Virus record (IMG/VR): IMGVR_UViG_3300033233_000001
Coordinates: 186,001-250,000 of that record
Length of the DNA stretch: 64,000 nt
Strand: one strand, 5' to 3'
The position numbers were made by a program, and so were the translations under genes. Of the stretch, positions 271 to 38,290 are shown piece after piece; position 1 is the stretch's first letter, and each line of letters starts with the position of its first letter. Under the pieces are notes generated by a model. The model worked only from the letters and a program-made list of their open reading frames with translations. It did not search any database and was not told the DNA's origin.

Positions 271-273
271 CGA

Positions 274-346: not shown

Positions 347-353
347 AATAAGG

Positions 354-426: not shown

Positions 427-434
427 ATGAACCA

Positions 435-597: not shown

Positions 598-618
598 CGG
601 GGTGCCCTCACCCAGTTA

Positions 619-692
619 CGCCCCCACGGGGAATTGAACCCCGCTCGACCCTGCTTGACAAGCAGGCGTCCACGCCAGTGGACTTTGGAGGC
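619..692 (-). tRNA. tRNA-Asp(GTC)
   Basis: Anticodon stem CCTGC/GCAGG, loop TT-GTC-AA, GGTTCAATTCC T arm. Confidence 0.88.
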
Positions 693-820
693 ATTGGTGT
701 GGCGGGTCCTACTCAGCGCGGACGCTGAGCCTTCGGTACCAAGGTGGACCTCACCACGATCACGCCGAGAGCTACCCGGCATGACTCGACGCAACACGGA
801 GAGCTACTCCGCCTTGGCCG
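693..820 (-). ncRNA. Candidate structured RNA between tRNA-Phe and tRNA-Asp
   Basis: Several adjacent hairpins, two with TAGCT loops; CCAAGG/CCTTGG closing helix; folded by eye. Confidence 0.35.
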
Positions 821-821
821 A

Positions 822-894
822 TGGGACGCCCTGGAGTCGAACCAGGTTCCGCGGCTTTTCAGACCGCTGCAATGACCGCACTTGCTCACGTCCC
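822..894 (-). tRNA. tRNA-Phe(GAA)
   Basis: GGGACG acceptor, loop CT-GAA-AA, GGTTCGACTCC. Confidence 0.88.
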
Positions 895-898
895 GTGA

Positions 899-969
899 CA
901 GGCCAGGCAGGCGTCGAACCTGCTCGACGCGCGATTTGGAGTCGCGCCGGCTACCTCAGCCTCTGACCT
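899..969 (-). tRNA. tRNA-Trp(CCA)
   Basis: AGGTCAG/CTGGCCT acceptor, loop CT-CCA-AA. Confidence 0.85.
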
Positions 970-974
970 AAGGA

Positions 975-1258
975 CTCCTGGGGCTGGAATCGAACCAGCG
1001 ACCACTCGGTTACGTACCACTTCGGCTTTCGCCGCCCGCAGGCGCGGTTCGTGGTCTGGACTATCCCATCGTCCTCGACTTGCAGTCGGTCGGACGTCGC
1101 CCCTCTAGTCTCTACACCTTCCCCCGAGGGGGCTTGGCTCGGGATTGCCACGTCTCTTGCGACGAGGGTTCCCCGAGTTTGGGCGATTTTCACCGGCCGA
1201 TTACTCGGTCGGGCTGCCAACGGACAGCCGAGCGCTCTTCCATCTGAGCTACCCAGGA
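975..1258 (-). tRNA. tRNA-Asn(GTT), split by an intron (exons 1258-1224 and 1012-975)
   Basis: Joined exons give CTCGG-CT GTT AA-CCGAG anticodon arm and TCCTGGG/CCCAGGA acceptor. Confidence 0.92.
1013..1223 (-). ncRNA. Group I intron (211 nt, IC3-like, no ORF) in the tRNA-Asn anticodon
   Basis: U.G at P1 (GGCTGT/GCAGCC); core elements AAACTCGGGGAA, AATCCCGAGCCAAG, GTGTAGAGACT, GATAGTCC; terminal G. Confidence 0.92.
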
Positions 1259-1300
1259 ATGTGGCTGGCGCCCGATGGCGCCAGCCGTCTTCTTCGGTTC

Positions 1301-1319
1301 CTATTCAGTTTTCAAAGAG
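1301..1319 (-). promoter_or_regulatory. rrn-type boxA antitermination-like element
   Basis: CTCTTTGAAAACTGAATAG on the tRNA-coding strand, upstream of tRNA-Asn. Confidence 0.6.
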
Positions 1320-1339
1320 GCCGCCGTGAAGCGGCTTCA

Positions 1340-1412
1340 TTCCGGGTCGAGGACTCGAACCTACGATTTTCTGAGTCAGAGTCAGACGGCCTGCCGATTA
1401 GCCGAACCCGGA
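1340..1412 (-). tRNA. tRNA-Gln(CTG)
   Basis: TCCGGGT acceptor, loop CT-CTG-AC, GGTTCGAGTCC. Confidence 0.9.
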
Positions 1413-1485
1413 TGGGATGGACGGGACTCGAACCCGCTTAGGCCGATGTAAGAAACCGGTGTAGTTCCTGATCTACATCCATCCC
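1413..1485 (-). tRNA. tRNA-Lys(CTT)
   Basis: GGGATGG/CCATCCC acceptor, loop TT-CTT-AC; unusual D arm. Confidence 0.75.
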
Positions 1486-1494
1486 GAAAAACCA

Positions 1495-1566
1495 TGGGAG
1501 CGACGGGGGTCGAACCCGCGACCGTCCAGTTAAAAGCTGGCTGATCTACCTCTGATCTACGCTCCC
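1495..1566 (-). tRNA. tRNA-Lys(TTT)
   Basis: GGGAGCG acceptor, loop CT-TTT-AA, GGTTCGACCCC. Confidence 0.88.
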
Positions 1567-1570
1567 GCTT

Positions 1571-1765
1571 TCACGCGGCAGCGCGTTTCTCCTCTCGTCC
1601 CTCGACGCCCAGCACGGTGCGCCGATCTGCTCCCGACATGAGCAGCCACAGGCCGTCGACTTCGTCCTGAAGCCGATCGACCTCGTCCTCTCCGCCGCGG
1701 GCGCGCGCAGCCCGAAGCCGCTCGCGCGCCAGCCGGTACCTCTCCACGATGTGCACGGTAGTCAT
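1571..1765 (-). CDS. Hypothetical protein (64 aa) inside the tRNA array
   Basis: ORF fills the gap between tRNA-Tyr and tRNA-Lys. Confidence 0.5.
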   Translation of the reverse strand: MTTVHIVERYRLARERLRAARARGGEDEVDRLQDEVDGLWLLMSGADRRTVLGVEGREEKRAAA

Positions 1766-1778
1766 GATCTTTCTCGAT

Positions 1779-1858
1779 TGGAGCCGGAGGGAATTGAACC
1801 CCCTGTGCCGTGAGGCGCCCGGTCTACAGCCGGGTGGGGACCATTCCCCATCGACTCC
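1779..1858 (-). tRNA. tRNA-Tyr(GTA)
   Basis: Loop CT-GTA-GA, long variable arm, GGTTCAATTCC. Confidence 0.88.
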
Positions 1859-2177
1859 AGAAATGCGAAGAGGGCGCTCGGTTTCCCGCGCGCCCTCGTA
1901 GTTTCTGGATGGTGGTCCGTACTTACGAGGGCGATCTGGGCTTCCGATTCTGGTGCGCGTAGAAGCCCGTCCAGGCGCACACGACTCCGCGATCGCAACC
2001 GCGGAGCGGCAGCGACATCGGGAGCATGGCGATGGAGGTTTTTGTCACGGAGGGCGGTTTCTCGTTCAGCGGGGAGTTATCCCCAGGTTCTCGTATGTCT
2101 GACATGCCGCTGGCAGGCGGGTCAAGAAGAAAAACGACAGGCAAGAAAAATCGTCGGAGACGCACCTACACACCGCA

Positions 2178-19570: not shown

Positions 19571-19954
19571 TCAGTCGAGCCTGAAGCCCAGCATCGAGAG
19601 CGCGAAGGTCACGACTTCCCGCGCCGACTTCTCGCCCTCGGCCGCCCGCTGGCTCATGAGGCGCAGGAACGTGTAGAGCACTTCCAGGTCCCGAAAGATC
19701 ACCCGCACGTGTCCGTCCTGGTGCATCGCGATGATGCGGTCTTCCGCGAAGCAGAACTCCAACAGACACCGCGCCGCCTCTCGACCAACGACCCGAACAT
19801 CCTCGTCGTCATCGAGCGGCAACGTGAACATGTCCGGCGGCGGACAGAGCGCGCTGTCACCATGCTCCATGTAGAACCAGACCTGGCGTACGAACGTCGC
19901 GTAGGCCGGAAGCTCGCCAGCCTTCAACGGAAAGAGGAGCGCGCTGTCCATCAC
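19571..19954 (-). CDS. Hypothetical protein
   Basis: Coupled to the J-domain gene. Confidence 0.65.
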
Positions 19955-20565
19955 CCAGCCGCTTTCCGTACGCTGAGCATCGCATCGCGAGCACGCGTGA
20001 TCTCCTCGAAGCGAGCGCGTGCCCGCTCCTTCACCCCGTCAGGTGAGCCAGGCGGCACCATGTCCGGATGGCACTCATGCGCGAGCTTGCGGTACGCCTT
20101 CTTGATCTCGTCCTCCGAAGCGTCGATCGAGATGCCAAGCACCTCGTACGGACGAGGCCCGAACGGCATCCCTGAAGCCGCTTGCTGCGCGGCCTGAGCC
20201 GCCCGCCGAGCGCCGGCTTGCGCGGCCGTTTGAGCGGCCTGACGCGCCTGCTCTTTGGCGCGCTCGCGGAGCTTCGCGGCACCGGCATCCCAGAGAAACT
20301 TGTAGCACTTCTTGCAGGTGCCGTGGCCGTTCGTCGGGTGGACCTGCTCCATCTCGCTGATGGAGAACTGCCGCTGGCACGGAGCGCACGTGAAGGTCGA
20401 CTGAAGGTACTCGGGCGGCAAGGCAGCGATGCTCGTCTGGTTGAAGCGCTGGGCGGCCCGGAAGCCGCCCTGCTCGATGAACTCGAAGCCGCGGTCGACG
20501 AGATGCTCGACGCCGGTCTCCATCACGTCGCCGAGGATGTCTTCGATCCGCTTCTGCCTGGGCAT
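19951..20565 (-). CDS. C-terminal J-domain (DnaJ-like) protein with Zn finger; start uncertain (ORF open to 20658)
   Basis: PYEVLGI...[18 protein letters not shown]; CAPC/CKKC. Confidence 0.85.
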
Positions 20566-20621
20566 GCTCCTGGTATCGCCGAATTCGGGTCCGAGGTCAA
20601 CGGGAAGGGACTGGCCGGCGC

Positions 20622-20649
20622 TTGCAAACGGGGGGGGGCCTGATAGGAT
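20622..20649 (+). promoter_or_regulatory. Putative promoter with a G9 run in the spacer
   Basis: TTGCAA-N16(G9)-TAGGAT, TGn extension, ATG at 20657. Confidence 0.45.
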
Positions 20650-20656
20650 TTCGGCC

Positions 20657-21004
20657 ATGTCATACTCAGGACTCGGACAGGTCGATTCGGTTCCGGCAGG
20701 CGTGCGCGAGGCTGCGCTCGCGTCACTGCGAGCGGAGGGCCTCCCGGCTCCGGCGCCGGAGGACTTCGCCGCTGCGCGACGAGCGTATGATCAGGGCGTG
20801 GCTCCAAGCCCAGGCTGGACGCCGACACGGCTGGCAGAACGCGGCGCGCAGCTGTACGCACAAACACTACGCGGCGCGGCGATGAATCGACTGCCAGGTC
20901 CGTTTCTGGGCGGCGTCAGTCCGTGGTTTTGGCCGCTGCTCGGCGTGTGTGTCGCAGTGCCCGTCGCGGGCTACGCATACTATCGGCAGCGACGGGCTGG
21001 CTAA
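20657..21004 (+). CDS. MSY-GLG membrane protein on the opposite strand
   Basis: MSYSGLGQ...[25 protein letters not shown]. Confidence 0.75.
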
Positions 21005-27600: not shown

Positions 27601-28536
27601 TCAGACCGCCGGGCTCTCGGCCTGGAGGATCTTGTAGCCGCACATCGTGAAGTACACGGTGCCGCCGAGGTTGACGGCGAGCCGGCCGACGTTGTTGGCC
27701 GCCGACGGATCTGGCGCTGGAACTAGCTCGCCCTCGGCAAAGCCGAATCCAGGCAAGAAGCCGCCTCCCGGAAGCGTAGCCCAGTTGACCTCGGCGATGC
27801 CGATCTCGTGCATCAGCGTCATCTTCCAGGTCACGGTGGAGCCGCGCTCGAAGAAGTCGCCGACAGGCAGATAGAACGGCCGATCGAACTCGCTGAAGAT
27901 GTAACGAGACGGGATTGGGATCTGATTCTGCCGGTTGCGGTTCGAGGCGTTGTCCTGGATCTCGAACAAGTAGTCGATCTCGCCAGGCCGGAACGTCTGG
28001 ACCGCTTGCGCGCCAGCAACCGTGATGGGACCAACGCGCGCACCGATGTACGCCCCGGAGAACGGATCTGCGGTCGATGCGACCGGGCGGAACCGACCGG
28101 TGAGCGGCGTGATGACCTCGGTGCCTGCCGGCGGGTCACTCGGCCGACCGTCGTACGGTCCCTGCGAGTACGTCCGCATCAGAAACGCGCTCATGTAGCT
28201 CGTGCAGACGAACGGTCCGTCCATCGACACCTGCTTGTTGTCGAGCAACTGCGTGCCGGCGACAGTCAAGCCGGGCTCAGTCGGGCCCGGAATGTCGATG
28301 GAAAAGTTCAGGAAGTACGGGACGCGCTTGCCGGGAATGTCCTCGATGTACCGGATGCGCTTCTGCGACTTCGAGAGCGCTTCCTGCATCCGCCGAAGCT
28401 CAAGCTGCTGGGACTCGTAGTCGGTCGCCAGCTTGCCGTAGCGTTCGTTGAGAACCTTCGTGCGTGCAAAGAGCTTCCGGTGTTGCTCTTCCATCTGGCG
28501 GAGAACCGCCGCTGTTTCCGGGTCGTGAATCGGCAC
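27601..28536 (-). CDS. Putative capsid-associated jelly-roll protein with N-terminal coiled coil
   Basis: Coiled coil, then beta-rich domain ending VYFTMCGYKI. Confidence 0.55.
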   Translation of the reverse strand: MPIHDPETAAVLRQMEEQHRKLFARTKVLNERYGKLATDYESQQLELRRMQEALSKSQKRIRYIEDIPGKRVPYFLNFSIDIPGPTEPGLTVAGTQLLDNKQVSMDGPFVCTSYMSAFLMRTYSQGPYDGRPSDPPAGTEVITPLTGRFRPVASTADPFSGAYIGARVGPITVAGAQAVQTFRPGEIDYLFEIQDNASNRNRQNQIPIPSRYIFSEFDRPFYLPVGDFFERGSTVTWKMTLMHEIGIAEVNWATLPGGGFLPGFGFAEGELVPAPDPSAANNVGRLAVNLGGTVYFTMCGYKILQAESPAV

Positions 28537-28616: not shown

Positions 28617-29675
28617 TTATTTTGGAACGGCCCGAACCTTCTCTGGCCTCTCCACGTCGCAGGTTGCCTCGTTCACCATCGAGAGCGACCTGCCGAACCT
28701 CTTCGCGATCTCCCGACACGGTACGCCTGACCCTGCCAGCGATCGCCACTCGTCTACTTCGGAACGCGGAACTCGTTTCTCCATGGGGAAGCGCGGTTTC
28801 GTAACCAGACCAAGCTCTTCTGTCGATCTGTTCGATGTCGGAACGATGTCTTTGACGACCGCATGCACTACCGAGTTAGCACGCCCGTAATGCCTTCCGA
28901 TCGCCACGATCGACGCACCATCTGTCCTGAGCCTTCGCCACTCTTCTTGGATCTCGTCCGTCAGTCCCGAGTTGACACCCGACCAGAATGACGACTCTCC
29001 TCCAGCTGCCCGGCGACCAGTCTTAGGTTGAAAGCCAGAGTCGAGAAGCGCCTTCCACTTGAGCGACCGAAGCCATTCCCCAATCGCCGCGACGTGGGCC
29101 TGACGATCGACGATGACGTAGTTCATCTCTTTCTGAGACGGCGGCGCCGAGATACGCGCGCTCCACCCTCTCGCCCTCAGAGCGCGGCGCACCCACCCGA
29201 TCAAAACGCCTGGCTTCTGAGCGAAGCCGAACTGCGCGCCATTGCTCGCGGACCGCTTCTCTGTCTTTCTAAGAAACCAGCCGTCCGTTTCGACCAGCGA
29301 CTTCAGGAAGAGCCTTGTGCACTCTTCGTCGTCATCCACCCACCGTGGCGGCGGTACCATCAGCTTATCGGCACCAGCACCGATGTACTTGTGAGCGACG
29401 CCGAAGTCGCCAATCACGTCATGCGTCGTCCAGTAGATCTCGAAGAAGTCACCGAACTCCTCGGTAAGCGCCTTCATGTGCTTCTGGTACACGTGGTACC
29501 CACCGTAGACGAGCGTGAACAGTTCTTTCACGCGCATCAGCCATGCTGGGTACTTATCGCCTACGGTGACGGCCACCTTCCAGCTTTGCTTGCCGCGCTG
29601 CTGGATGTAGCCGTCACCGAAGACGGCGCCCAAGAGTTCCGCTTTATACCCGTTCACGCACCGCTCGCTTGACAT
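28617..29675 (-). CDS. Free-standing two-motif LAGLIDADG homing endonuclease with C-terminal HTH-like repeats
   Basis: LLGAVFGDGYI and FLKSLVETDGWF; lower GC3; two HTH-like segments. Confidence 0.85.
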   Translation of the reverse strand: MSSERCVNGYKAELLGAVFGDGYIQQRGKQSWKVAVTVGDKYPAWLMRVKELFTLVYGGYHVYQKHMKALTEEFGDFFEIYWTTHDVIGDFGVAHKYIGAGADKLMVPPPRWVDDDEECTRLFLKSLVETDGWFLRKTEKRSASNGAQFGFAQKPGVLIGWVRRALRARGWSARISAPPSQKEMNYVIVDRQAHVAAIGEWLRSLKWKALLDSGFQPKTGRRAAGGESSFWSGVNSGLTDEIQEEWRRLRTDGASIVAIGRHYGRANSVVHAVVKDIVPTSNRSTEELGLVTKPRFPMEKRVPRSEVDEWRSLAGSGVPCREIAKRFGRSLSMVNEATCDVERPEKVRAVPK

Positions 29676-29737: not shown

Positions 29738-31280
29738 CTACAAAACGTCCCTTGAATGAATGCCATCGAGCACGTACTTGATGTCCTTCTCGATGTCGTC
29801 CTCGCCGGGAACCGAGAGGCCCGTGCCCGTCGCGATGCCGGTCGTGAGACCGGAGCCGGTGATGATCGCGTTCGGGCTGTTGTTCGGCACGAGGCCGTTC
29901 AGCTGCTCGATGACGCTCGCGCCGGGCGTCTGCCCGATCGGCGAAGCGATCGCGATGACCTGGAAGCCCTGACGCGGCGGGATGAGAATCGGCCTCGCCA
30001 GACGCATCAGCGCGGACGACGTCGGAACGCCGTTGTTCGCGCGCGGGAGACGGCTGTCCGAGAAGAAGCCATCGAGACCACCCGCCATCGGGGTGTACGC
30101 CGTGAACGTGGTCAGCTGCGGCTTGTCGCCCGCCACCATCTGCCAGAAGAACTGGTTCTGGCTCTGGTGGTAGAGCTTGTGCACGCGCATGATACGGTCG
30201 GGGAACACACCGTCGACCGAGCCGATCGGCTGGGCTCCCGGAGTCGGCTGTGCGATCACGACCGGTGCTTCCGGGTTGAACCGGAAGTACGTCCAGACGC
30301 GCACCGCGAGGGTGATGTACGTCTGGTCGGACGGGAAGAAGCCACCCGTCGTCAGGTTCGACACCGAGATGTCGGCGCCCTGACGAACGAACAGCTGCGC
30401 GCGGTTCGGGACTGCCCCGAACACGCCCTGGTTGGTGTTGCGGAGGTCCACGTCACCGTCGACTCGGATGAGCGAATCGTAGACTTCAGTTACGCCAGAA
30501 GTTTACTCTGGCTCTCCGGATTTCTCCGGAGTGTCGGACTATATCACCAACCGTCAGTTGACGGTCGCCGGGCGCTCTTGGGTCGGATTATCGTTGGAAC
30601 TCACCGACCTAGTCTCTACACCTTCTACCGGCACATCAGCCATTCGATGTCCACCGATAGCTTGGCTCGGGATTACCTCGCGGAGAATCGCTTCTACCTC
30701 CACAGGGGCTTCCCCGCCGTTTCGCTTGATGACCGCCATGGTATCTAGGACAACAGCGTCTAGCTTCGTCTGTCGATACATGCGCACCAAGCAGGCGCGT
30801 GTCAGGAACCAGTCAACGACCTCTGCCTCTGTCTTCTTGGCTGTGAGGTGCGGCAGCAAGATCCTAGTGATCTTGAGCACGTCGTCTTTGCGTGCGACGT
30901 GCAACCAATACTGCCAGCGGGTCGCCTTCTTGCCCTTCCACACGCGACGGATTGGCTGGTGATGCACACCAACGTCCGTCAGGATCCGACTCACTCGATC
31001 GACCATCGCTTTCGAGGTGTTGCAGATGACTAGCCACAGCTGGTAGCTCGTCTTCTTTCCCTTGGCCTTCCCGCTCTTGCGGACGATCGGGCGCTTCACT
31101 GCGAAGCATCCCTCTCCATCCACAATCCCGGCCAGCCAGGCGACGTCGGTCTCGTTCATCTTCTCCTTCTACCACGAAACGGTTTGATTCACCCAGTTGT
31201 TCACCGCTGAGTTACCTCAGCGGGCCGCCCTACTTCGACGGCTGATGAACGCGCTCACGGGTACCTACGATCTTGGGCAT
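29738..31280 (-). CDS. Putative major capsid protein, vertical jelly-roll type, 262 aa after splicing (exons 31280-31238, 30483-29738)
   Basis: Spliced frame MPKIVGTRERVHQP-F-YDSL; LF...SNL...G.FPSDQ; NNGVP..L.RPI.IP; LDG..SRDV; strong RBS. Confidence 0.65.
30484..31237 (-). mobile_element. Group I intron (754 nt) in the capsid gene
   Basis: P1 GCCGT/GCGGC; P3 CTGGGTG/CGCCCGG; AATCCCGAGCCAAG, GTGTAGAGACT, GATATAGTCC; ends in G; removal restores frame. Confidence 0.92.
30554..31159 (-). CDS. Intron-encoded single-motif LAGLIDADG endonuclease
   Basis: VAWLAGIVDGEGCF; own AGAGGAG RBS. Confidence 0.92.
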   Translation of the reverse strand: MNETDVAWLAGIVDGEGCFAVKRPIVRKSGKAKGKKTSYQLWLVICNTSKAMVDRVSRILTDVGVHHQPIRRVWKGKKATRWQYWLHVARKDDVLKITRILLPHLTAKKTEAEVVDWFLTRACLVRMYRQTKLDAVVLDTMAVIKRNGGEAPVEVEAILREVIPSQAIGGHRMADVPVEGVETRSVSSNDNPTQERPATVN

Positions 31281-31495: not shown

Positions 31496-32104
31496 TCAGC
31501 TTCCAGCGAATAGGTTGCGTGCGTAGAGACCGCCCGCATAGCCACGGCCGTCCGCGGCCGCGAACGGTTCACGTACCCGTCTGATCTGCTTTTGGAACGT
31601 CGCTGGCAGTGCGAGGTCCATCGGGATGACGGTCGAGACCGCCGGAGGCTGCATCGGACCACCGAGTCCGAGCATCCCCTGGTATGGCGCGCCATAGTGG
31701 GCGACATCCACCATCGGGTCTCCAAACCCAGACACGTTCGACGACGCCGGCATCGCAGCGGCCTGAGCCGGCGTCGCTTGCACCATCGCCATCGCCCGCG
31801 GCAGGTACGGCATGATCGCCGAGATCCCCATGCCAGTCGCGAGAGCCTGACTGACCTCGTCCGACATCCCGATCCCACCGCCCATCACGAGCGCCAAGGC
31901 CCCACCGCCAGCGCCAGTGATCGCCATGAGCATCTTCGGATCCTGCCCTACGAGCAGGCGACCAACCACGTTGTCGCTCAGCCACGAAGCGAGCAACATG
32001 CCGCCCGCGCCGACGAGAGACGGCACGACGAGACGATGGACGATGCCCGTCGTCGGGTCACCCTCTGCGTTTCGGCGCAGCCTCTTGTTTCGGCGCTTGC
32101 TCAT
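31496..32104 (-). CDS. Virion membrane protein with basic leader
   Basis: MSKRRNKRLRRN, several Gly-rich TM helices, ends GRGYAGGLYARNLFAGS. Confidence 0.8.
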   Translation of the reverse strand: MSKRRNKRLRRNAEGDPTTGIVHRLVVPSLVGAGGMLLASWLSDNVVGRLLVGQDPKMLMAITGAGGGALALVMGGGIGMSDEVSQALATGMGISAIMPYLPRAMAMVQATPAQAAAMPASSNVSGFGDPMVDVAHYGAPYQGMLGLGGPMQPPAVSTVIPMDLALPATFQKQIRRVREPFAAADGRGYAGGLYARNLFAGS

Positions 32105-32133: not shown

Positions 32134-34356
32134 TCAGAACATGCCGGCGAAGAGGTTCCGCGCGAAGAGGCCTCCGGCGTAGCCGCGACCTTCGGGGGTC
32201 ACGAGCGACGACGGGATCTTTCGCTCGTACGGCATCTCGCCCGTGATGAGCTTGGCGCCCTCGACCGGCGTCTGGATCGACGCGAACGGGGGCTCCATGC
32301 GACCGCCCTCCGTCATGCTGCCCGGACGAACGAAGTCCGGGTGCTTGCCGTACCAGCCGTCGATGTCCGTCTCCTCGATGTACTCGCCGACGCCGCCGAG
32401 GCCGGCCGCCGCGTAGTACGTCTGACCGACGCCCGCCGCTGCCTCCATCACCGTGTTCCCCGTGGCCTCCATCACGTCCATGAGGCCGTCGACGCCCTCC
32501 TGATTCGCGGGATCGATGCCCTCGTGGTAGCCGGCCGCCGCGTAGTACGTCTCGCGACCGAGTCCGGCCGCGGCGTAGTACGTCTCGCGACCCATGCCGT
32601 GGCTCGGGTCGTCGACGTACGCGCCCAGGCCCTGCATCGGCTGCTCGACGTACTCGCCGAACGCGCCCATCGGCTGCTCAACGTACTCGCCGAGGTACGA
32701 CGCCATGCCAGTGCCGCGGAGTAGACGCGCGATGAGCGCGAGGCCCATGCCGGTCAGCACCGGTGTCGCGTTCTCCGTGATCATCGACATCTTGCCTGCG
32801 CGATGCGCCCAGGCCGAGAGGCCGAGAGCGCCAGCGATGACCGCCGCGTTCACGATGCTCTTCGTGGCGAGCGCCGCATCTGCCGGACGGCCCGCATCGA
32901 GCACGCCGCGGACCTGATCGCTGTTCGCAGCCAGGTTCGACAGCGCATTCGCTGCCAGGAAGCCCGCGGTTGCGTAGCCAGCCGGCATCGCGATGTCCGT
33001 GATCACGTCCTTGCCGTAGAGCTTGAAGAAGTTCCGACGAAGCCGGTGGCGGCGACGGTTCTTCGACATGCCCGTGGTCTGCGGAACGTAGATCGGGTTC
33101 CGGCGCGAATGCCGGCGGCTCTTCTTGCTCTTCCTCTTGCGGCCCATCGAGTGCCTCCTTGCGTTCTTCGTTACGGCCTTCTTCGAGCCGCGTGCCTTCT
33201 TCGACTTGCGTGCCGCCCTACGCGGCTTGCGCGAACGAGCCTTCGCCTGGATCATCCGAGCAAGCTCGGGACCCCACGATCCACGCTTCGAGTGCGCCCG
33301 ACGTGCGACGCCACCGAACGTGAACTTGCGCGTGTAACCCTTCACGCGACGGCCGCCGACCGAGACGGTCGACTTGCGGCTGCTGCCCGGACGGTAGAGC
33401 ACCGTCTGGCGGGCGCCGGTCAGAAAGTTCGGGTGGACGCGACGCGACCGGCGACGGCGGCTGCCGCGACGGCTGTTCCGACGCGAGCGGCGGCGATTGC
33501 CAAAGAGCCCGCGCGACGCACGACGACGACTGTTCCGGCGCGGTCGACGCGAGTGCGCACGACGTGACGTGTTACGGCGTGATCGACGGCGATGGCGGTT
33601 CGCCGCCAACTCGTGGAACAGCGGCGAGCCGTACATGTGATGCGACGAGCGGAACGTCGGCGTACCAGAGACGTGCGACTTGCTCGCGCGCTTCTTCGAC
33701 GAGCGCTTCTTCGAGCCGCCCTTCGACCGGCGCTTCTTCGATGCCTTCTTCTTGCTGGCGGCATTTCGCCGCGAACGACGACGACCGTTGCGACGTGATG
33801 CGCGGCGGCGGCCACCACGACGGCTCGTGTCTCGCCGCGAGCGCCTGCGACCGGCGTTTCGACGACTCCGACGGCGCGCGCTCCGGCGCGACGCGCGACG
33901 GCTGCCTCGGCGGCTCGTGTCCTTCCTCGATGCCCGACGGCGCGTACGCCTGTTCGCCGCGGCCTGCATCAGCGGGTTGCGGCGCGAAGCCTTGCGCGAA
34001 CGGCGACGCTTGCGACCGGCGCCATGGGCGACGACGCTCATCAGTCCGCCACGGTTACGGCGGACCGACGCCGTGCCAGGCGCGTGCGAACGACGCTTGC
34101 GGGAGCCACTCCTCTTCCGCTTGCGGCCAGCGTTGGCACGCATCGCAGCGCGCAGTCCCGGGTAGTTGTACGCCATCGAAACTCTCCTGCGACTAGGGTT
34201 CTTGGATCCGACGAGCGGAGAGCCGTGCGGATGCTTCGGTCGGCCTGGATTCACCACGGCGAGATGCGTTACGCCGCCCGGATTGGGCGCCATGCCCGGC
34301 GTTCGGTCGTACGACCTCGCCGCGCCTTCGCTGCTTCTCCGGTAGATCAAGGCCAC
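32134..34356 (-). CDS. 740-aa Arg/Ser/Lys-rich core-like membrane protein
   Basis: Long RRxRRN-type tract, TM region, YYAAAG repeats, ends GRGYAGGLFARNLFAGMF. Confidence 0.8.
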   Translation of the reverse strand: MALIYRRSSEGAARSYDRTPGMAPNPGGVTHLAVVNPGRPKHPHGSPLVGSKNPSRRRVSMAYNYPGLRAAMRANAGRKRKRSGSRKRRSHAPGTASVRRNRGGLMSVVAHGAGRKRRRSRKASRRNPLMQAAANRRTRRRASRKDTSRRGSRRASRRSARRRSRRNAGRRRSRRDTSRRGGRRRASRRNGRRRSRRNAASKKKASKKRRSKGGSKKRSSKKRASKSHVSGTPTFRSSHHMYGSPLFHELAANRHRRRSRRNTSRRAHSRRPRRNSRRRASRGLFGNRRRSRRNSRRGSRRRRSRRVHPNFLTGARQTVLYRPGSSRKSTVSVGGRRVKGYTRKFTFGGVARRAHSKRGSWGPELARMIQAKARSRKPRRAARKSKKARGSKKAVTKNARRHSMGRKRKSKKSRRHSRRNPIYVPQTTGMSKNRRRHRLRRNFFKLYGKDVITDIAMPAGYATAGFLAANALSNLAANSDQVRGVLDAGRPADAALATKSIVNAAVIAGALGLSAWAHRAGKMSMITENATPVLTGMGLALIARLLRGTGMASYLGEYVEQPMGAFGEYVEQPMQGLGAYVDDPSHGMGRETYYAAAGLGRETYYAAAGYHEGIDPANQEGVDGLMDVMEATGNTVMEAAAGVGQTYYAAAGLGGVGEYIEETDIDGWYGKHPDFVRPGSMTEGGRMEPPFASIQTPVEGAKLITGEMPYERKIPSSLVTPEGRGYAGGLFARNLFAGMF

Positions 34357-34424
34357 TCTGCACGCACTTCTCCCTGCCAGACCCGTAGCAGGGAGGAGCG
34401 GCGGCGCCCCGGTCTTCGATGGTC

Positions 34425-34453
34425 AAACTACAGGGGCTCTCGGTGCAGGTCAA
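34425..34453 (-). promoter_or_regulatory. sigma70-type promoter for the core/capsid operon
   Basis: TTGACC-N17-TAGTTT with A-rich upstream tract. Confidence 0.6.
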
Positions 34454-34777: not shown

Positions 34778-34963
34778 CTATTTCAGATCGGAACACGCGT
34801 CGCGGATCAGCTGCTTCGACACGTGCTTCGAGACCTCACGGTGCCGAGGTACCGACAGCGGGGCCTTCGTACGTGGGTTTTCGTACAGCGTGTGCTCTGC
34901 TCCTTCGCGAACGAGCACGGCTCCGCATGCGACGATGCGTCTGATGACCTCTACGCGTTTCAC
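34778..34963 (-). CDS. hicA: HicA-family toxin
   Basis: R.GAEHTLY.NP......VPRH.E. Confidence 0.85.
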   Translation of the reverse strand: MKRVEVIRRIVACGAVLVREGAEHTLYENPRTKAPLSVPRHREVSKHVSKQLIRDACSDLK

Positions 34964-35232
34964 GCCGCACCAACACGCTCAATCCGAACACGGTGCACCG
35001 CGTGCTGCGGACGGCCACGTTCCGCCTGCAACGCGAGGATGTCGTTCACGGCCGAGATCACGTTTTTGCGCGCGGCAGCCGGCGTCCGGCCCTGCCCATA
35101 CGCGCCCGGAAGAGCAGGAACTTCCGCCGACCACCACCGATCGCTCGCATCGTAGACCAGGACGATGTCGTAGGACTTCAGAAGCCGGCGGCTCGTACGC
35201 TTCGACGGAGTGTTTCGGCTGGTCCTCTTCAT
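34960..35232 (-). CDS. hicB: HicB-family antitoxin with N-terminal basic tag
   Basis: MKRTSRNTPSKRTSRR; W.AEVPALPGAYGQGRT..AA..N. Confidence 0.85.
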   Translation of the reverse strand: MKRTSRNTPSKRTSRRLLKSYDIVLVYDASDRWWSAEVPALPGAYGQGRTPAAARKNVISAVNDILALQAERGRPQHAVHRVRIERVGAA

Positions 35233-35269
35233 GTCGAAGACAGTACCACGAACCGAAGTCGAAGTCGCT

Positions 35270-35491
35270 TCAGGCCGGAACGAGCACTTTTTTCGTGATC
35301 TCGTCGTCCGGATCCACCCCCTTCGGCTCCTCCGGCGGCAACTTCGGCTGCACGTGCCGACCGCTGACACGCGGCAGGCCGCGCTGCGAGTCCTTCACGC
35401 CGCGCGCCGCCTTCCGAAACGCGACCATGGCCTCGCGCATCTCGGCGACTTCCTTCGGCTCGGGGATCTTCGACTGACGTGCCTCGGACAT
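35270..35491 (-). CDS. Hypothetical protein
   Basis: GGAGGG RBS; in operon. Confidence 0.6.
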   Translation of the reverse strand: MSEARQSKIPEPKEVAEMREAMVAFRKAARGVKDSQRGLPRVSGRHVQPKLPPEEPKGVDPDDEITKKVLVPA

Positions 35492-35495: not shown

Positions 35496-35837
35496 CTACC
35501 TCCCTCGCCGCGGCTGCGGCGCCTCGTATCCACGAAGCAGCTTCTCGATCTCGTGCAAACGACTGTCCATGCGCTCCATCGTCTCGACCAGATGCTCCGA
35601 CGCGCCTTCGGTCTCGGTCGCGAGGCGCACCTGCTCTTGCAGGGCTTCCGAGAAGTCGTGCGTCGCCGTCAGCAGCGTGTCGCGCACTTCCTTCGCGTCC
35701 TGCACGCGGAGCGCCTGTACCTCGTTCAACTTCTGCGTCTGAAGCCAGGCGTAGCGAGCGAGCGGAACGAGCACGAGCAGGAACACGGCGCCGAATGCGC
35801 CCCACTGCTGCACGATCGCATCGGCCGCTTCAGGCAT
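35496..35837 (-). CDS. Single-TM plus coiled-coil protein (holin-like candidate)
   Basis: QWGAFGAVFLLVLV then coiled coil. Confidence 0.5.
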   Translation of the reverse strand: MPEAADAIVQQWGAFGAVFLLVLVPLARYAWLQTQKLNEVQALRVQDAKEVRDTLLTATHDFSEALQEQVRLATETEGASEHLVETMERMDSRLHEIEKLLRGYEAPQPRRGR

Positions 35838-38290
35838 TACCCATCAATCCCGTCCTTCAGGACCCTTAGCCCGCCACCGCACATGATGGCTAGGAAGCCC
35901 TCGCTTCCGTCCTCCTGCGGCTGCGGCGAATAGATCGCGAGCATCTTCCCGTCCGGCGCACAGAGCAGCCAGCAGTCGCGCGCCGACTTCCGTGAGTCGA
36001 TCTCCTCGAACTCGCCATCGTTCCGGCGAAGCTCGCCTCCGAGATACTTGCCGAGTCGTGTCCATGCCTTCGGGTACGCACGCGGAGGCCGCGTCGTACC
36101 GTTCTTACGCACGTCATTCGGGTCAGCCAGCTGCGCGTTCTCGTAGAACAACACGCCCTTGCCAACCTCGTACGGCTGATCCTCGCTCTTGCCGTGCAGG
36201 TGCTTGTAGTCGATGTCCTTGCCGTCGGCGTACCACTTGTCGGTTCTGTAGCTCACCGACAGCGCATCGCCGATGCAGACGAGACGCGCAGGCGGCTCGT
36301 GCCCGACGTCGACGACCTCAAGCGGCTTCTTCGAGTGGAACGTCTCGTACTTGTCCATCGCGGCGTCGATGTCATGACCGCGAGCGCCGCTGAACCTGTC
36401 CGGATCGACCTCTCGGCCTGCGACGCGCCCCATCACGCCCGGCCCAAGCCTGCGCTCCTCTGTCTCTCCGGTGCGATTCCGCCACAGCGGCTTGCTGATG
36501 CGCTTGGCACCCGGATGCCCGCTCGTGCGCTTGCCGTTTGCCGCCGGTCGGCTCGTGCGCTTGGTGACCAGCGTCCCGTTCGGACGGCTCGTGCGCTTCG
36601 CATCCACCGGCCGGCTCACGCGCTTCGGCGGCCGAGAGCGGCGCTTCTCTTGGATCTGCGCGTTGATCTGGAACCGATCGCCGTCGGACTCGTCGCGCGC
36701 GACCACGCGCGCGATCTCCTCGACCTGCTCGGGACTCGCGTCGGCGCCCTCGGTGTTCACGCGCATCGCGGTCCGCAGATGTGACAGCGGGTTGTTTTCC
36801 ATGGTCGATCCTTCCGGCGGCGCACTGCCGCCAGGCCGCTTCAGCCGGCTCACTCGCTTCTTCTTCGGCTCTTCCGGGCCAACAGGAGTCACACGGCTCA
36901 GTTCGGTTTCCTTCTGGCCCCGGAACTCGCCGTGCTTCTTGATCGTGGCCTTTACCCGTACGTGCTTCCCAGCGGCTTCAGACGGCCGGAAGTCCTCGAA
37001 CGGCCAGCTGGAACCGAACCACTTGAAGGCGTACTTGGCAGCATCGCCGGTGCCACGGAAGGAGCAGAGGTACGTCGTGCCGTAGTTACCCTCGATCGGC
37101 CGCACGCCGAGCATGTCGAGTTCCAGCACGATGCGCTCGTCGACGGTTCCGAAGTGCCCGTCGACTACGTCTCCTCGTACCTTCTCGGCTTCGCGCGCCA
37201 TCGCGCGCTGATATCCGGAAGCCAGGGACGCGACCACGCCTGCGCTCCGACCGGTCACGACGCCTGACAGCAGTGCCTGCCGCACGTTGTAGCCGTAGTC
37301 GGTCAGCGTCGTGACGTCCGCGTCGACGAACTCCTTCGTCGCCCACTCGATCGTACGCTTGGCGGCCTCGTGCTCCTGCGGATCTGGCTGCTGCTTCTTC
37401 GCGACCTCGAACCCGAGTTGTCCCCGGCGGCTGGGCATGCAGATGTCCCAGGCCTCGTCGGCCGTCGAGCGCTTGCCGCCTCCGCTCTCGTACGCCACCG
37501 ATCGCGACACCCAGCCGTACTTCGAGATCACGTGGATGACGACTGCGAGGTACTCCTCGATATCGACAGCCATCGTGAGGCGGCTCGCTCCGCCGCCCAG
37601 GCCCTCCCAGTCCTCCATGCCGCGCGCGAGGTCGAAGATCGCGAACAGCGTTTCAGCAACATCCGCGATTTTCTTCGGGTCACCATGACCGCCCAGGAAG
37701 TCCGTCAGACACGTCCTGCCCACCGCCGCGTACTTACCATCCTCATGCGCGAGCACGAAGACAGTAGCTCGATCCCTCTTGGTCAAGCAGTGATCACACC
37801 GCGTCGGCTCGACTGTGCGGAACTCTGCCGGCAACACCTCGTCGGGCACGACGCGCAGCCAGGGCCCGCCGTGCGCCTGCTCCTCGTCGTAGTCGAGACA
37901 CGCGATGAGCCGCCAACCCTTGAGGCGCGGCTCCTCGCCCGCAACGAGCACGGGTGTCACCTCGCTCTTGATCGTGCGCTTCTGCTCCGTGTACGCGGTG
38001 CCGCCGTACGCGCCTTCGATCGCCTTGAGCGTCGTCGACGGCACGTTCGTGTAGTACGGCTCGCCCTTCTCGAACACGAGCGGCTTCAGCCCGAGGCGCC
38101 GTGTCCGCTTCTGGAGCTTCTCGATCGCGTGCGAGAGCGCCTGTAGCTTCATCGCCGGGATCCAAAACAGCCCGACCTTGTAGCCGCCCGCTTCGAGCGC
38201 AGCTTTCCGCTCGACGAGGCGCGGGTCATCGCGCTTCTCCATCTTGTCGTCGGAGACGTTCGAGCGCAGGGCTGCGGACGTGTAACTCAT
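35837..38290 (-). CDS. 817-aa multidomain protein: MSY leader, Zn/OB-like phage domain, KRTSR repeats, C-terminal domain
   Basis: CDHC...VGRTCL.DFLG; GHFGTV...FKW...KATIKKH; five KR(T/V/I)S repeats. Confidence 0.8.
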   Translation of the reverse strand: MSYTSAALRSNVSDDKMEKRDDPRLVERKAALEAGGYKVGLFWIPAMKLQALSHAIEKLQKRTRRLGLKPLVFEKGEPYYTNVPSTTLKAIEGAYGGTAYTEQKRTIKSEVTPVLVAGEEPRLKGWRLIACLDYDEEQAHGGPWLRVVPDEVLPAEFRTVEPTRCDHCLTKRDRATVFVLAHEDGKYAAVGRTCLTDFLGGHGDPKKIADVAETLFAIFDLARGMEDWEGLGGGASRLTMAVDIEEYLAVVIHVISKYGWVSRSVAYESGGGKRSTADEAWDICMPSRRGQLGFEVAKKQQPDPQEHEAAKRTIEWATKEFVDADVTTLTDYGYNVRQALLSGVVTGRSAGVVASLASGYQRAMAREAEKVRGDVVDGHFGTVDERIVLELDMLGVRPIEGNYGTTYLCSFRGTGDAAKYAFKWFGSSWPFEDFRPSEAAGKHVRVKATIKKHGEFRGQKETELSRVTPVGPEEPKKKRVSRLKRPGGSAPPEGSTMENNPLSHLRTAMRVNTEGADASPEQVEEIARVVARDESDGDRFQINAQIQEKRRSRPPKRVSRPVDAKRTSRPNGTLVTKRTSRPAANGKRTSGHPGAKRISKPLWRNRTGETEERRLGPGVMGRVAGREVDPDRFSGARGHDIDAAMDKYETFHSKKPLEVVDVGHEPPARLVCIGDALSVSYRTDKWYADGKDIDYKHLHGKSEDQPYEVGKGVLFYENAQLADPNDVRKNGTTRPPRAYPKAWTRLGKYLGGELRRNDGEFEEIDSRKSARDCWLLCAPDGKMLAIYSPQPQEDGSEGFLAIMCGGGLRVLKDGIDG

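What the first reader, a model, noticed from the sequence alone, without database searches (positions are those of the whole stretch)
32134..34356. 740-aa protamine-like core protein fused to a membrane anchor and YYAAAG repeats
Seen: several hundred residues dominated by Arg/Ser/Lys in iterated RRxRRN units. These are followed by hydrophobic helices resembling 31496, then GEYVEQPM x2 and (RE/GQ)TYYAAAG x3 with DNA-level duplication at about 32400-32600. It is the first gene after the promoter at 34425-34453. Inference: a genome-condensing protein tethered to the internal membrane and possibly cut into many basic peptides. It may be the source of the tag.
Basis: partly seen in the sequence, partly recalled or inferred. 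Interest (0 to 1): 0.6.

Follow-up and report, generated by a model that had tools for sequence, protein, structure and literature searches.

The report
Giant protamine-like virus core protein
A real, conserved 740-residue gene of an uncultured 298-kb sediment virus encodes a 400-residue arginine/serine/lysine thread (net charge about +150) held between two conserved end modules; it most likely binds and neutralises the viral DNA, and it belongs to a whole lineage of large viruses in which no known capsid or packaging gene can be recognised.

Summary
ORF 32134-34356 (-) is a real gene. GC3 is 0.82 in its frame. It has 63 close and about 170 distant metagenomic relatives. Thirty relatives carry the same 42-residue N-terminal motif at residue 1, which confirms the GTG start.

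Architecture:
- N-motif, residues 1-42.
- Polybasic thread, 43-442: 30% Arg, 14% Ser, 9% Lys, net +150, ten RRN.
- Three weakly hydrophobic helices, 443-553.
- Acidic Gly/Tyr repeats: GEYVEQP x2 plus degenerate copies, TYYAAAG x3.
- A 23-residue terminal peptide. In the whole genome it is shared only with the downstream 202-aa mini-paralogue.

No Pfam, PHROG, PDB or GenBank-phage relative was found.

The gene always precedes the two most conserved genes of the lineage, one of which models as a low-confidence beta-sandwich.

Six related genomes, two with terminal repeats, show no recognisable terminase, portal, HK97 or PRD1-type capsid gene.

About 25 membrane proteins of the genome end in Asn plus poly-Arg tails with the same grammar.

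Best reading (0.45): a virion-core DNA-neutralising polycation anchored by its ends. A membrane anchor, cleavage into peptides and "source of the tags" are not shown.

The parts
34425..34453 (-). Sigma-70-like promoter candidate, TTGACC-N17-TAGTTT, 69 nt upstream of the start codon
   Evidence: Sequence read. The class TTGAC-N16-18-TAnnnT gives 18 sites in the genome against 1-9 in shuffles, and 17 of 18 are intergenic. The strict consensus scan does not flag this site.
34367..34375 (-). Shine-Dalgarno-like AGGGAGAAG, 10 nt before the GTG start
   Evidence: Sequence read directly.
32134..34356 (-). Coding sequence of the 740-aa protein (stop codon included)
   Evidence: ORF list. GC3 is 0.82. 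There are 63 homologues and 170 cluster representatives at E<=1e-3.
34231..34356 (-). Residues 1-42: conserved N-terminal motif ending in a short hydrophobic strand and NPG
   Evidence: An HMM built from 13 seed sequences finds the motif at residue 1 in 30 family members of 680-960 aa. More distant members keep a related motif.
33031..34230 (-). Residues 43-442: polybasic Arg/Ser/Lys thread, net +150, with ten RRN and a few conserved islands (residues 61-75 and 318-352)
   Evidence: Composition. Islands seen by comparison with homologues. DNA-level 24- and 33-nt repeats. In relatives the length is 400-635 aa, net +104 to +250, and the length-charge correlation is r = 0.89.
32698..33030 (-). 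Residues 443-553: three long Gly/Ala-rich helices, a candidate membrane- or shell-association module
   Evidence: AlphaFold2 with 59 sequences gives helices at pLDDT 70-78. Invariant Pro, Gly and GMG columns. The helices are weakly hydrophobic. Foldseek finds only generic three-helix bundles, E>=2.
32206..32697 (-). Residues 554-717: acidic, Gly/Tyr-rich, predicted disordered region with GEYVxQP and TxYAAAG repeats and a conserved DGLMDVMEA helix
   Evidence: Repeat positions. DNA repeats. Copy number varies from 3 to 5 among relatives. pLDDT is below 50.
32137..32205 (-). Residues 718-740: conserved C-terminal peptide (core GRGYAGGLFARNLF) with a short terminal helix
   Evidence: Nearly invariant in 59 sequences. 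It occurs in only two ORFs of the whole genome. A short helix is modelled at low confidence.
31496..32104 (-). 202-aa mini-paralogue: short Arg tag, the same helices and the same C-terminal peptide, without the long thread and repeats
   Evidence: BLASTP E 5e-9. Family profile E 4e-6 for the helices and 1e-15 for the tail. Present directly downstream in six of seven related contigs.
29738..30451 (-). Main exon of the most conserved gene of the lineage (237 aa here, 61-72% identical in seven related contigs); beta-sandwich model of low confidence; always follows the basic protein
   Evidence: Synteny. 246 homologues. AlphaFold2 pLDDT 59, best structural Z 5.4. Weak language-model lead to the PM2 P2 and PRD1 P3 capsid families, 0.75-0.77.
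27601..28536 (-). Second highly conserved gene of the block (311 aa, 50-61% identical in relatives)
   Evidence: Synteny. No named relative.

Best explanation
The protein is a structural, genome-associated polycation of a large uncultured bacterial virus.

Shown:
- It is a real, conserved protein.
- Two sequence-conserved ends flank a 400-residue Arg/Ser/Lys thread.
- The thread's sequence and length drift by repeat expansion while its charge density is kept.
- The gene heads the conserved block that contains the lineage's two best conserved genes.
- A mini-paralogue with the same ends follows it.

Inferred:
- The thread binds the phosphate backbone of the packaged double-stranded DNA and neutralises it. 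Each copy carries about +136 net, so a few hundred copies would cancel about a tenth of the 595,000 charges of the genome.
- The N-terminal motif, the three-helix module and the terminal peptide fix the thread to the inner face of the particle (lipid or protein shell), so the DNA is tied to the shell.
- The roughly 25 membrane proteins with Asn plus poly-Arg tails contribute in the same way.
- The many Ser-Arg-Arg units could be switched by phosphorylation. The lineage has a conserved Ser/Thr-kinase-like protein.
- The small acidic Tyr-rich repeat region may shield part of the thread before assembly.
For: - Reality and start codon: GC3; 63 homologues; N-terminal motif at residue 1 in 30 members; full ORFs in related contigs.
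- Charge kept while sequence drifts: thread of 400-635 aa, net +104 to +250, density 0.25-0.40 per residue, r = 0.89 between length and charge. DNA tandem units lie inside the thread.
- Module position: conserved order 740-aa protein, mini-paralogue, 237-aa gene, 311-aa gene in seven contigs, and the same triad in two distant contigs.
- Ends conserved.
- Terminal peptide restricted to the two paralogues.
- Same Asn plus Arg-run grammar on about 25 proteins with a transmembrane helix in this genome and in relatives.
- Kinase-like protein conserved in the lineage.
- Established knowledge, not tested here: Arg-rich proteins condense DNA in sperm, baculovirus (P6.9) and adenovirus (VII, Mu), and Ser phosphorylation controls P6.9 and the hepatitis B core tail (background in PMC5899202 and PMC7412469, found).
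Against: - There is no direct evidence that the protein is in virions or binds DNA.
- No RNA or proteome data exist for this sediment virus.
- The particle type is unknown: no capsid, portal, terminase or packaging ATPase family was detected. The 237-aa model is of low confidence.
- The helices are only marginally hydrophobic, and the complex prediction gave no verdict.
- A sigma-70-like promoter would equally fit an early, non-structural gene.
- By the positive-inside rule (own knowledge), poly-Arg tails of membrane proteins stay cytoplasmic. If a vesicle were pinched off the cell membrane inwards, as in PRD1-like assembly, these tails would face the shell and not the DNA.
Confidence: 0.45

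Rival explanations
1. Extended minor capsid protein (tape measure, cement or scaffold). The conserved ends and the short conserved islands dock on repeated sites of the shell. The basic linkers contact acidic lipid or the inner shell surface, and they set or stabilise particle geometry rather than condense DNA.
For: - Position next to the two most conserved genes.
- Mostly unstructured chain with short conserved islands and short strand-like units flanked by Asn: 46 units in 37 family members.
- Tandem short motifs (GEYVxQP, TxYAAAG) whose copy number varies.
- Own knowledge: tape-measure proteins of tectiviruses and giant viruses are extended and basic. Context in PMC13598248.
Against: - The thread length varies by more than 230 residues among close relatives and evolves by repeat slippage. 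This fits a ruler poorly unless particle sizes vary in step.
- A density of 0.3-0.4 positive charges per residue is far more than shell contacts need.
Confidence: 0.15
2. Not a virion component. It would be an intracellular nucleic-acid-binding or condensate-forming protein that compacts host or viral DNA, binds RNA, or builds a replication or assembly compartment. Arg-rich and Tyr-rich parts would act as stickers.
For: - A sigma-70-like promoter directly upstream.
- An Arg-rich thread plus a Tyr/Gly-rich acidic region in one chain. By own knowledge of FUS-type proteins, this grammar drives phase separation.
- Most of the protein is predicted to be disordered.
Against: - The invariable linkage with the lineage's best conserved genes.
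- The terminal docking-type peptide shared with a paralogue.
- The same tags on many membrane proteins of the same gene block.
All three fit a particle-building module better.
Confidence: 0.15
3. Polyprotein precursor. The chain is cut next to the Asn residues that bracket the Arg runs, releasing many 10-30-residue basic peptides that stay with the DNA. The same cut would trim the Asn plus poly-Arg tags of other proteins.
For: - Asn is enriched 3.0-fold just before and 2.7-fold just after basic runs in the proteome.
- Nearly all C-terminal tags start with Asn, in this genome and in relatives.
- The last RRN sits exactly at the border between the thread and the helices.
- Own knowledge: adenovirus Mu and VII are made this way, and several capsid proteins self-cleave at Asn.
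Against: - No protease family was found among the window's 84 proteins.
- No Peptidase_S78, ClpP or adenain was found. For adenain the control did not ring, so that search is uninformative.
- Asn is also a common helix or strand cap. Conserved units of the type N-P-x-Y-V-V-x-N suggest a structural role.
- There are no peptide data.
Confidence: 0.1
4. Not translated: a chance or antisense open frame in GC-rich DNA.
For: High-GC DNA produces long spurious frames. Three plus-strand ORFs of 161-254 aa overlap the region. My own codon-usage gene caller shortened the gene to 422 aa.
Against: - GC3 is 0.82 in this frame against 0.62-0.72 for the overlapping frames.
- Conserved motifs at both ends lie in a single ORF in many divergent genomes.
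- The family has 170 cluster representatives.
Confidence: 0.01

Closest known systems
Protamine-type DNA condensers (sperm protamines, baculovirus P6.9)
   Same: Arg-rich, interspersed Ser (21 [ST]RR units) and low complexity. The expected role is charge neutralisation of packed double-stranded DNA. Control by phosphorylation is possible, since a kinase-like gene is conserved in the lineage.
   Different: Seven to ten times longer. Arg is 30% rather than 40-70%. The polycation is flanked by conserved N- and C-terminal modules. There is no sequence relationship (no Pfam hit). The host is probably bacterial.
Adenovirus core proteins VII, V and Mu
   Same: Basic proteins that neutralise viral DNA inside the particle. 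Protein V bridges core and shell.
   Different: No homology. No adenain-type protease was detected, although that search was uninformative. Cleavage is not shown. The fused helical module and terminal peptide have no counterpart in adenovirus.
Arg-rich C-terminal domain of hepatitis B core protein, and SR-type domains
   Same: Repeated Ser-Arg-Arg units. In those systems, phosphorylation tunes nucleic-acid binding during assembly (PMC7412469).
   Different: Those domains are 30-40 residues long and attached to a folded capsid protein. Here the thread is 400 residues long and the folded partner is unknown.
Tape-measure and cement proteins of membrane-containing icosahedral viruses (PRD1 P30, PBCV-1 P2)
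   Same: Extended, basic, poorly structured proteins encoded with capsid genes that line the inner shell.
   Different: Their length is tied to capsid geometry. Here the length drifts by repeat expansion and the charge is far higher. A double jelly-roll capsid is not demonstrated.
Terminal targeting peptides (MinD/FtsA membrane-targeting helix; encapsulin cargo-loading peptides; scaffolding-protein coat-binding ends)
   Same: A short, nearly invariant peptide at the extreme C-terminus behind a flexible linker, shared by two otherwise different-sized paralogues.
   Different: The target is unknown. The helix is modelled at low confidence only. Docking to the neighbouring conserved proteins gave no verdict.

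Membership tests
Protamine / baculovirus P6.9 type | Small size (about 50-110 residues) | tested here: not met
   740 aa, with a polybasic part of 400 aa.
Protamine / baculovirus P6.9 type | Arg as dominant residue (about 40% or more) | tested here: not met
   30% Arg and 39% Arg+Lys in residues 43-442.
Protamine / baculovirus P6.9 type | Ser/Thr interspersed with Arg as phospho-acceptors | tested here: met
   21 [ST]RR units and 14% Ser. Phosphorylation itself is not testable here.
Protamine / baculovirus P6.9 type | Sequence membership in a curated family | tested here: not met
   No Pfam or PHROG family at E<=0.1 / 0.01.
Protamine / baculovirus P6.9 type | Condenses DNA in the particle | not testable with these tools
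   Needs purified protein or particles.
Adenovirus core proteins VII / Mu | Sequence membership | tested here: not met
   No Pfam hit.
Adenovirus core proteins VII / Mu | Precursor cut by a virus-coded adenain-type protease | tested here: inconclusive
   Peptidase_C5 was not found in six genomes, but the control genomes did not ring either. No protease family was found among the 84 window proteins.
Linker histone H1/H5 (one source names homologue P0050 so) | Globular winged-helix domain | tested here: not met
   No Pfam domain. Only a Lys/Ala/Ser-rich stretch (residues 198-226) resembles H1 tails.
Integral membrane protein (transmembrane anchor) | At least one segment of about 19 residues with favourable membrane insertion | tested here: inconclusive
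   The best windows sum to +4.8, +5.5 and +6.5 on the Hessa scale (values recalled from own knowledge). Clear transmembrane helices of this genome give -3.3 to +3. Some evident Gly-rich anchors of tagged proteins also score +4.1 to +4.4.
Integral membrane protein (transmembrane anchor) | Helical segments long enough to span a bilayer | tested here: met
   Modelled helices of 27, 24 and 19 residues, pLDDT 70-78.
C-terminal amphipathic membrane-targeting helix (MinD/FtsA type) | Short helix at the extreme C-terminus, conserved, behind a flexible linker | tested here: inconclusive
   Position and conservation are met. The helix at model residues 305-312 has pLDDT of only about 52. Lipid binding is not testable here.
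Capsid tape-measure protein (PRD1 P30 type) | Encoded with a double jelly-roll capsid gene | tested here: inconclusive
   The neighbouring 237-aa protein models as a beta-sandwich at pLDDT 59, with best Z 5.4 to carbohydrate-binding modules and weak rows for single jelly-roll capsid proteins. The language-model lead to the P2/P3 capsid families is only 0.75-0.77. The Phage_Capsid_P3_N search was empty, but its controls were silent.
Capsid tape-measure protein (PRD1 P30 type) | Length fixed by particle geometry | tested here: inconclusive
   The thread is 400-635 aa among 20 full-length relatives. Their particle sizes are unknown.
Twin-arginine (Tat) signal peptide | RR motif plus hydrophobic stretch at the N-terminus of the protein | tested here: not met
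   The RRNFF motif followed by a helix lies at residues 439-477, behind 440 residues. The residues after RRN are not conserved in relatives.

The most novel reading that the evidence does not exclude
The protein is the main genome condenser of an unrecognised lineage of large (about 115-300 kb) bacterial viruses. These viruses would lack the terminase-portal-HK97 machinery of tailed phages and the known double jelly-roll and packaging-ATPase genes. In this reading the DNA is compacted by polycations. These are this 740-aa thread, its mini-paralogue and some 25 membrane proteins with Asn plus poly-Arg tails, possibly trimmed at Asn and switched by a virus-coded Ser/Thr kinase. The DNA is then enclosed by a lipid layer and a shell built from the two conserved neighbouring proteins. 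That would be a mode of virion assembly not known for any prokaryotic virus of this size.
Probability: 0.2. Interest if true: 0.9.

Novelty: new variant of a known kind. Interest (0 to 1): 0.62.

Why it matters
Arg-rich DNA condensers are known from sperm, baculoviruses and adenoviruses. To my knowledge none is known as a conserved core gene of a large bacterial virus. Tailed phages pack naked DNA under pressure (PMC13598248).

This family is the hallmark of a metagenomic lineage: about 170 clusters at 50% identity, and contigs up to 298 kb, two of them with terminal repeats. Its structural genes match nothing known.

If the protein does neutralise and tether the genome, the lineage would pack DNA by a different physical principle than jumbo phages. 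The protein would then be a handle for three tasks:
- finding such viruses in metagenomes;
- raising antibodies or tags to identify their particles;
- studying polycation-driven compaction regulated by a viral kinase.

If it turns out to be a tape measure or a cytoplasmic condensate former, it would still be an unusual, easily testable protein.

Tried and rejected
**Searches for the 740-aa protein and its paralogue that found nothing**
- Pfam and PHROG scans.
- blastn and tblastn against 50,697 GenBank phage records, with the C-domain and with two distant relatives.
- Exact-sequence look-up of the protein.

**Structure work**
- Foldseek on the C-domain model found only generic three-helix bundles, E>=2.
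- For the 237-aa neighbour: a profile search against PDB sequences gave nothing meaningful. Foldseek gave E>=1. The wide structural search gave Z<=5.4. The ESM-Atlas shape search gave TM<=0.39. Its fold is therefore not assigned.
- Complex prediction of the terminal 70 residues with the 311-aa and 237-aa proteins gave no verdict (score 0.00). This is no evidence either way.

**Hallmark genes, all empty**
- Six-frame Pfam searches on the own genome for Terminase_6N, Phage_capsid, Capsid_NCLDV, Peptidase_S78, CLP_protease and FtsK_SpoIIIE.
- The same kind of search on six related genomes for Terminase_6N, Phage_capsid, TerL_ATPase, Terminase_6C, Phage_portal, Terminase_3, Gp23, Phage_sheath_1, Phage_Capsid_P3_N, Pox_A32 and Peptidase_C5.
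- For Capsid_NCLDV, Gp23, P3_N and C5 the control genomes did not ring either, so those four say little.
- Every ORF of 366 aa or more was scanned singly, apart from one 453-aa ORF (L010:17581-18942) and one 401-aa ORF (L013:16960-18165), which were covered only by the batch scan. None was a terminase, portal, capsid or sheath.
- phrog_2 and phrog_9 were searched, but the tool shows no family names, so I do not use these results.
- A Walker-A pattern scan of my gene calls found no convincing packaging ATPase. The scan is crude.

**Other checks**
- Rfam found no group I intron model at gathering score around the split gene.
- Sequencing runs: only DNA runs of sediment metagenomes hold the region and no RNA run does.
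- Literature searches found no description of this family or of large membrane-containing prokaryotic viruses.

**Readings considered and rejected**
- A Tat signal: the motif lies 440 residues into the protein.
- An antisense artefact: rejected by GC3 and by conservation.

**Housekeeping**
- Only genetic code 11 was used.
Full report
**Setting**

The window is bases 186001-250000 of a single 297,749-bp virus record (IMG/VR type). It is linear, CheckV completeness is about 90%, and GC is 65%. The region is held almost completely by one sediment metagenome run. No RNA run holds it.

The following point to a bacterial (or at least prokaryotic) host:
- bacterial-type features: GTG and TTG starts, Shine-Dalgarno-like sites, sigma-70-like sites and toxin-antitoxin genes;
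- IS-type transposases and a cluster of 11 tRNA genes.

Yes. The minus-strand ORF 32134-34356 encodes 740 residues.

- GC at codon positions 1/2/3 is 0.63/0.61/0.82. This is the pattern of neighbouring genes. The overlapping plus-strand frames show no such third-position excess.
- Residues 61-440 hold 30% Arg, 14% Ser and 9% Lys, with a net charge of +145. There are ten RRN, eight RR.RR and 21 [ST]RR motifs.
- Three hydrophobic segments follow at 451-473, 495-513 and 525-551.
- Next come GEY[VI]E units at 556, 567 and 657, a degenerate GAYV at 578, and TYYAAAG at 592, 603 and 646.
- The DNA shows the corresponding 33-nt and 23-nt repeats between 32368 and 32693.
- The promoter-like site TTGACC-N17-TAGTTT lies at 34425-34453, 69 nt upstream of the GTG. 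An AGGGAGAAG lies 10 nt before the start.
- The strict consensus scanner does not list this site. The looser pattern occurs 18 times in the genome against 1-9 in shuffles, and 17 of the 18 sites are intergenic.

**Is it a gene, and where does it start?**

- A word-based search with residues 425-740 found 63 proteins of 408-959 aa, 30-57% identical over the C-terminal 316 residues, on contigs up to 220 kb.
- A profile search of 1.84 billion cluster representatives found 170 at E<=1e-3 and 70 at E<=1e-10.
- Thirty family members of 680-960 aa carry the same 42-residue motif at their very first residue. The window protein is one of them, which confirms the GTG at 34356.
- In related contigs the N-motif and the C-domain lie in one uninterrupted frame of 731-924 codons.
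- My own codon-usage gene caller cut the gene to 422 aa. Automatic callers probably did the same for the shorter database entries.

**Anatomy**

1. Residues 1-42 form a conserved motif that ends in a short hydrophobic strand and NPG.
2. Residues 43-442 form the polybasic thread.
   - Among 20 full-length relatives it is 400-635 residues long, with net charge +104 to +250 and density 0.25-0.40 per residue. Length and charge correlate at r = 0.89.
   - Sequence is conserved only in a few islands. In the window protein these are residues 61-75 and 318-352.
   - Relatives also carry short strand-like units flanked by Asn, of the type N-P-x-Y-V-V-x-N: 46 in 37 proteins.
   - DNA tandem units of 15-33 nt inside the thread show that it grows by slippage. 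Selection therefore appears to act on charge, not on sequence.
3. Residues 443-553 model as three long helices at pLDDT 70-78, from a 59-sequence alignment. Pro, Gly and GMG columns are invariant.
   - The helices are Gly/Ala-rich and only weakly hydrophobic. The best 19-residue windows sum to +4.8 to +7 on the Hessa scale. Clear transmembrane helices of the same genome give -3.3 to +3. Some evident Gly-rich anchors score +4.1 to +4.4.
   - Foldseek finds only generic three-helix bundles, both soluble and membrane-embedded.
4. Residues 554-717 are acidic (the C-part has net -14), rich in Gly and Tyr, and modelled as disordered. The copy number of GEYVxQP and TxYAAAG units varies among relatives.
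5. Residues 718-740 are a nearly invariant peptide with core GRGYAGGLFARNLF. In the whole genome it occurs only here and at the end of the next gene.

**The next gene**

The next gene (31496-32104, 202 aa) is a mini-paralogue.
- A family profile matches its helices at E 4e-6 and its tail at E 1e-15.
- In relatives its N-terminus is a short Arg tag.

**Context**

- Seven related contigs keep the same order: a 108-aa protein, the C-domain of the 817-aa protein, the basic protein, the mini-paralogue (six of the seven), the 237-aa protein (61-72% identical, the best conserved), the 311-aa protein (50-61%), and a 201-aa protein; a 282-aa protein follows in three of them.
- Two distant contigs, found through remote family members, keep the triad of basic protein, 237-like gene (E 2e-37 and 3e-33) and 311-like gene (E 6e-16 and 2e-8).
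- The 237-aa family has 246 members, all unnamed.
- Its AlphaFold2 model is a beta-sandwich of low confidence (pLDDT 59, pTM 0.54).
- The best structural matches are carbohydrate-binding modules (Z 5.4). Weak rows include single jelly-roll capsid proteins of HCIV-1, P23-77, caliciviruses and picornaviruses.
- A language-model search points weakly (0.75-0.77) to the PM2 P2 and PRD1 P3 capsid families.
- These are leads, not findings. The particle type remains open.

**No known morphogenesis gene**

- Every ORF of 366 aa or more was scanned singly, apart from a 453-aa and a 401-aa ORF covered only by a batch scan. None is a terminase, portal, capsid or sheath.
- Six-frame Pfam searches were run on six genomes of the lineage. 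Four are at least 90% complete and two have direct terminal repeats. They found no Terminase_6N, TerL_ATPase, Terminase_3, Terminase_6C, Phage_portal, HK97-type capsid, sheath or A32-type ATPase. FtsK_SpoIIIE was searched in the own genome only and was also empty.
- The searches for NCLDV capsid, Gp23, PRD1 P3 and adenain were also empty, but their controls were silent.
- Very divergent or intron-split genes could still be missed.

**The tags**

- About 25 proteins, nearly all from genome positions 195-250 kb, end in a basic tail. Most have a transmembrane helix, a spacer of about ten residues, an Asn and then an Arg run. Several others begin with KRTSRR-type tags that end in RRN.
- The same design recurs in the related contigs.
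- Asn makes up 2.4% of residues. It is enriched 3.0-fold directly before and 2.7-fold directly after basic runs.
- The 740-aa thread reads like a concatenation of such units, and its last RRN is the border to the helices.
- The tags are encoded in each gene, so this protein is not their source. The shared grammar argues for a shared partner or a shared processing step.

**Mechanism**

I take the protein to be a genome-associated polycation of the particle. The thread neutralises and binds DNA. The conserved ends fix it to the inner face of the particle. The mini-paralogue and the tagged membrane proteins do the same on a smaller scale.

- Shown: gene reality, architecture, the conservation pattern, synteny and the restricted terminal peptide.
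- Inferred: DNA binding, presence in virions, and attachment to lipid or shell.

A possible regulator exists. A 260-300-aa protein is conserved in the lineage (own genome 86296-87078; orthologues at E 1e-35 to 1e-44).
- It scores below Pfam's kinase thresholds.
- Its five-sequence profile matches Ser/Thr kinases in the PDB (PERK, PKC-theta, RSK2, Aurora B, B-Raf; E 6e-6 to 4e-4).
- The match covers the catalytic loop to the DFG region. The Gly-loop, Lys, D..N and DxG columns are invariant.
- That this kinase acts on the SRR units is only an idea. It is modelled on P6.9 and the hepatitis B core tail (PMC5899202, PMC7412469).

One caveat applies. By the positive-inside rule (own knowledge), poly-Arg tails stay cytoplasmic. 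In a PRD1-like inward vesicle they would face the shell, not the DNA. In a wrapping or budding assembly they would face the genome.

**Rivals**

- An extended tape-measure or cement protein.
- A cytoplasmic nucleic-acid-binding or condensate-forming protein.
- A polyprotein cut at Asn into basic peptides.
- An untranslated frame, which comparative evidence rejects.

Each rival is treated in its own section, with evidence and a refuting result.

**Comparison with known systems**

The protein works most like protamine-type condensers and the adenovirus core proteins. It is a member of neither:
- size and Arg content do not fit;
- no curated family matches;
- the flanking modules are new.

One database source names a homologue 'histone H1/5', but no linker-histone domain is present.

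The terminal peptide resembles terminal targeting peptides in position only. A docking prediction gave no verdict.

**Verdict**

- The family is undescribed and is a new variant of the viral polycation theme.
- It is the signature gene of a lineage whose particle biology is unknown.
- Interest is 0.62. The most novel reading still open is a terminase-less, polycation-condensed, lipid-containing large bacterial virus. I give it a probability of about 0.2.

Noticed in passing
window 29738-31280 (-): The most conserved gene of the lineage is split here. A 14-codon first exon (about 31239-31280, beginning MPKIVG) is followed by a LAGLIDADG endonuclease ORF (30554-31159). The frame resumes with the conserved continuation at about 30475. 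Relatives without the insert have one continuous gene. L022 has the same endonuclease (63% identical) at the same place. This is probably an intron with a homing endonuclease. Rfam gave no group I hit, and exact splice points were not determined.
   Followed up: partly
window 28617-29675 (-); L001, L019, L024: A second LAGLIDADG-type ORF (352 aa) sits between the 237-aa and 311-aa genes. Related contigs carry endonuclease ORFs at the same or neighbouring junctions. Homing elements therefore repeatedly target this conserved block.
   Followed up: partly
window 34778-35370 (-): A HicA toxin (61 aa, Pfam 30 bits against a cut-off of 27) and an upstream HicB-like ORF (136 aa, below cut-off) are inserted between the conserved block's upstream genes and the promoter of the 740-aa gene. 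In the relative L001 the corresponding gap is only about 85 nt.
   Followed up: partly
window about 9800-63500; whole genome 195-250 kb; L001, L003, L019, L020: About 25 proteins end in a basic tail, most with a transmembrane helix, a short spacer, Asn and a poly-Arg run. Several others start with KRTSRR-type tags that end in RRN. Many proteins of the block begin with MSYR or MSYT. The design is conserved in related contigs. Its function is unknown.
   Followed up: partly
whole genome and records behind L018-L022: No terminase, portal, HK97 or T4-type capsid, sheath, PRD1-type capsid, A32 ATPase or prohead protease could be detected in six genomes of the lineage. Two of them have direct terminal repeats. 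The virion type of this lineage is unknown.
   Followed up: partly
genome 86296-87078 (L009:6296-7078, +), outside the window: A lineage-conserved protein of 260-300 aa with a Ser/Thr-kinase-like catalytic core. Its profile hits PERK, PKC-theta, RSK2, Aurora B and B-Raf at E 6e-6 to 4e-4. The Gly-loop, Lys, D..N and DxG columns are invariant.
   Followed up: partly
window 35837-38290 (-): The 817-aa protein has three parts. The N-terminal 430 residues match phrog_2319 and proteins of Vibrio, Aeromonas, Ralstonia and Tunturiibacter jumbo phages; one of these is annotated as RecT-like. The middle holds KRTSRP-type repeats. The C-terminal 200-265 residues are the part kept in synteny with the basic protein.
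   Followed up: partly
window 56-1859 (-): A cluster of 11 tRNA genes (Ile, Arg, His, Ala, Asp, Phe, Trp, Gln, Lys x2, Tyr).
   Followed up: no
window, several ORFs: Several toxin-antitoxin and defence-type domains occur among the window's proteins: BrnT, Fic/Doc, MazE and AbiEii. There is also a DnaJ-domain protein (19951-20658) that is syntenic in relatives.
   Followed up: no
genome outside the window (L009, L010, L016): Inteins with LAGLIDADG domains interrupt a UvrD-type helicase, a ResIII/DEAD helicase and RtcB. The genome also encodes Ro60/TROVE, NAMPT and several IS-type transposases. It has an adenylosuccinate-synthetase-like protein that matches a PHROG family named 2-aminooxy adenylosuccinate synthetase, a possible PurZ-type enzyme.
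   Followed up: no
whole genome: TTGAC-N16-18-TAnnnT sites number 18 against 1-9 in shuffles. Seventeen lie in the 18% of the genome that is intergenic, and most lie 7-100 nt upstream of a gene start. This suggests that host sigma-70-type transcription is used across the genome.
   Followed up: partly
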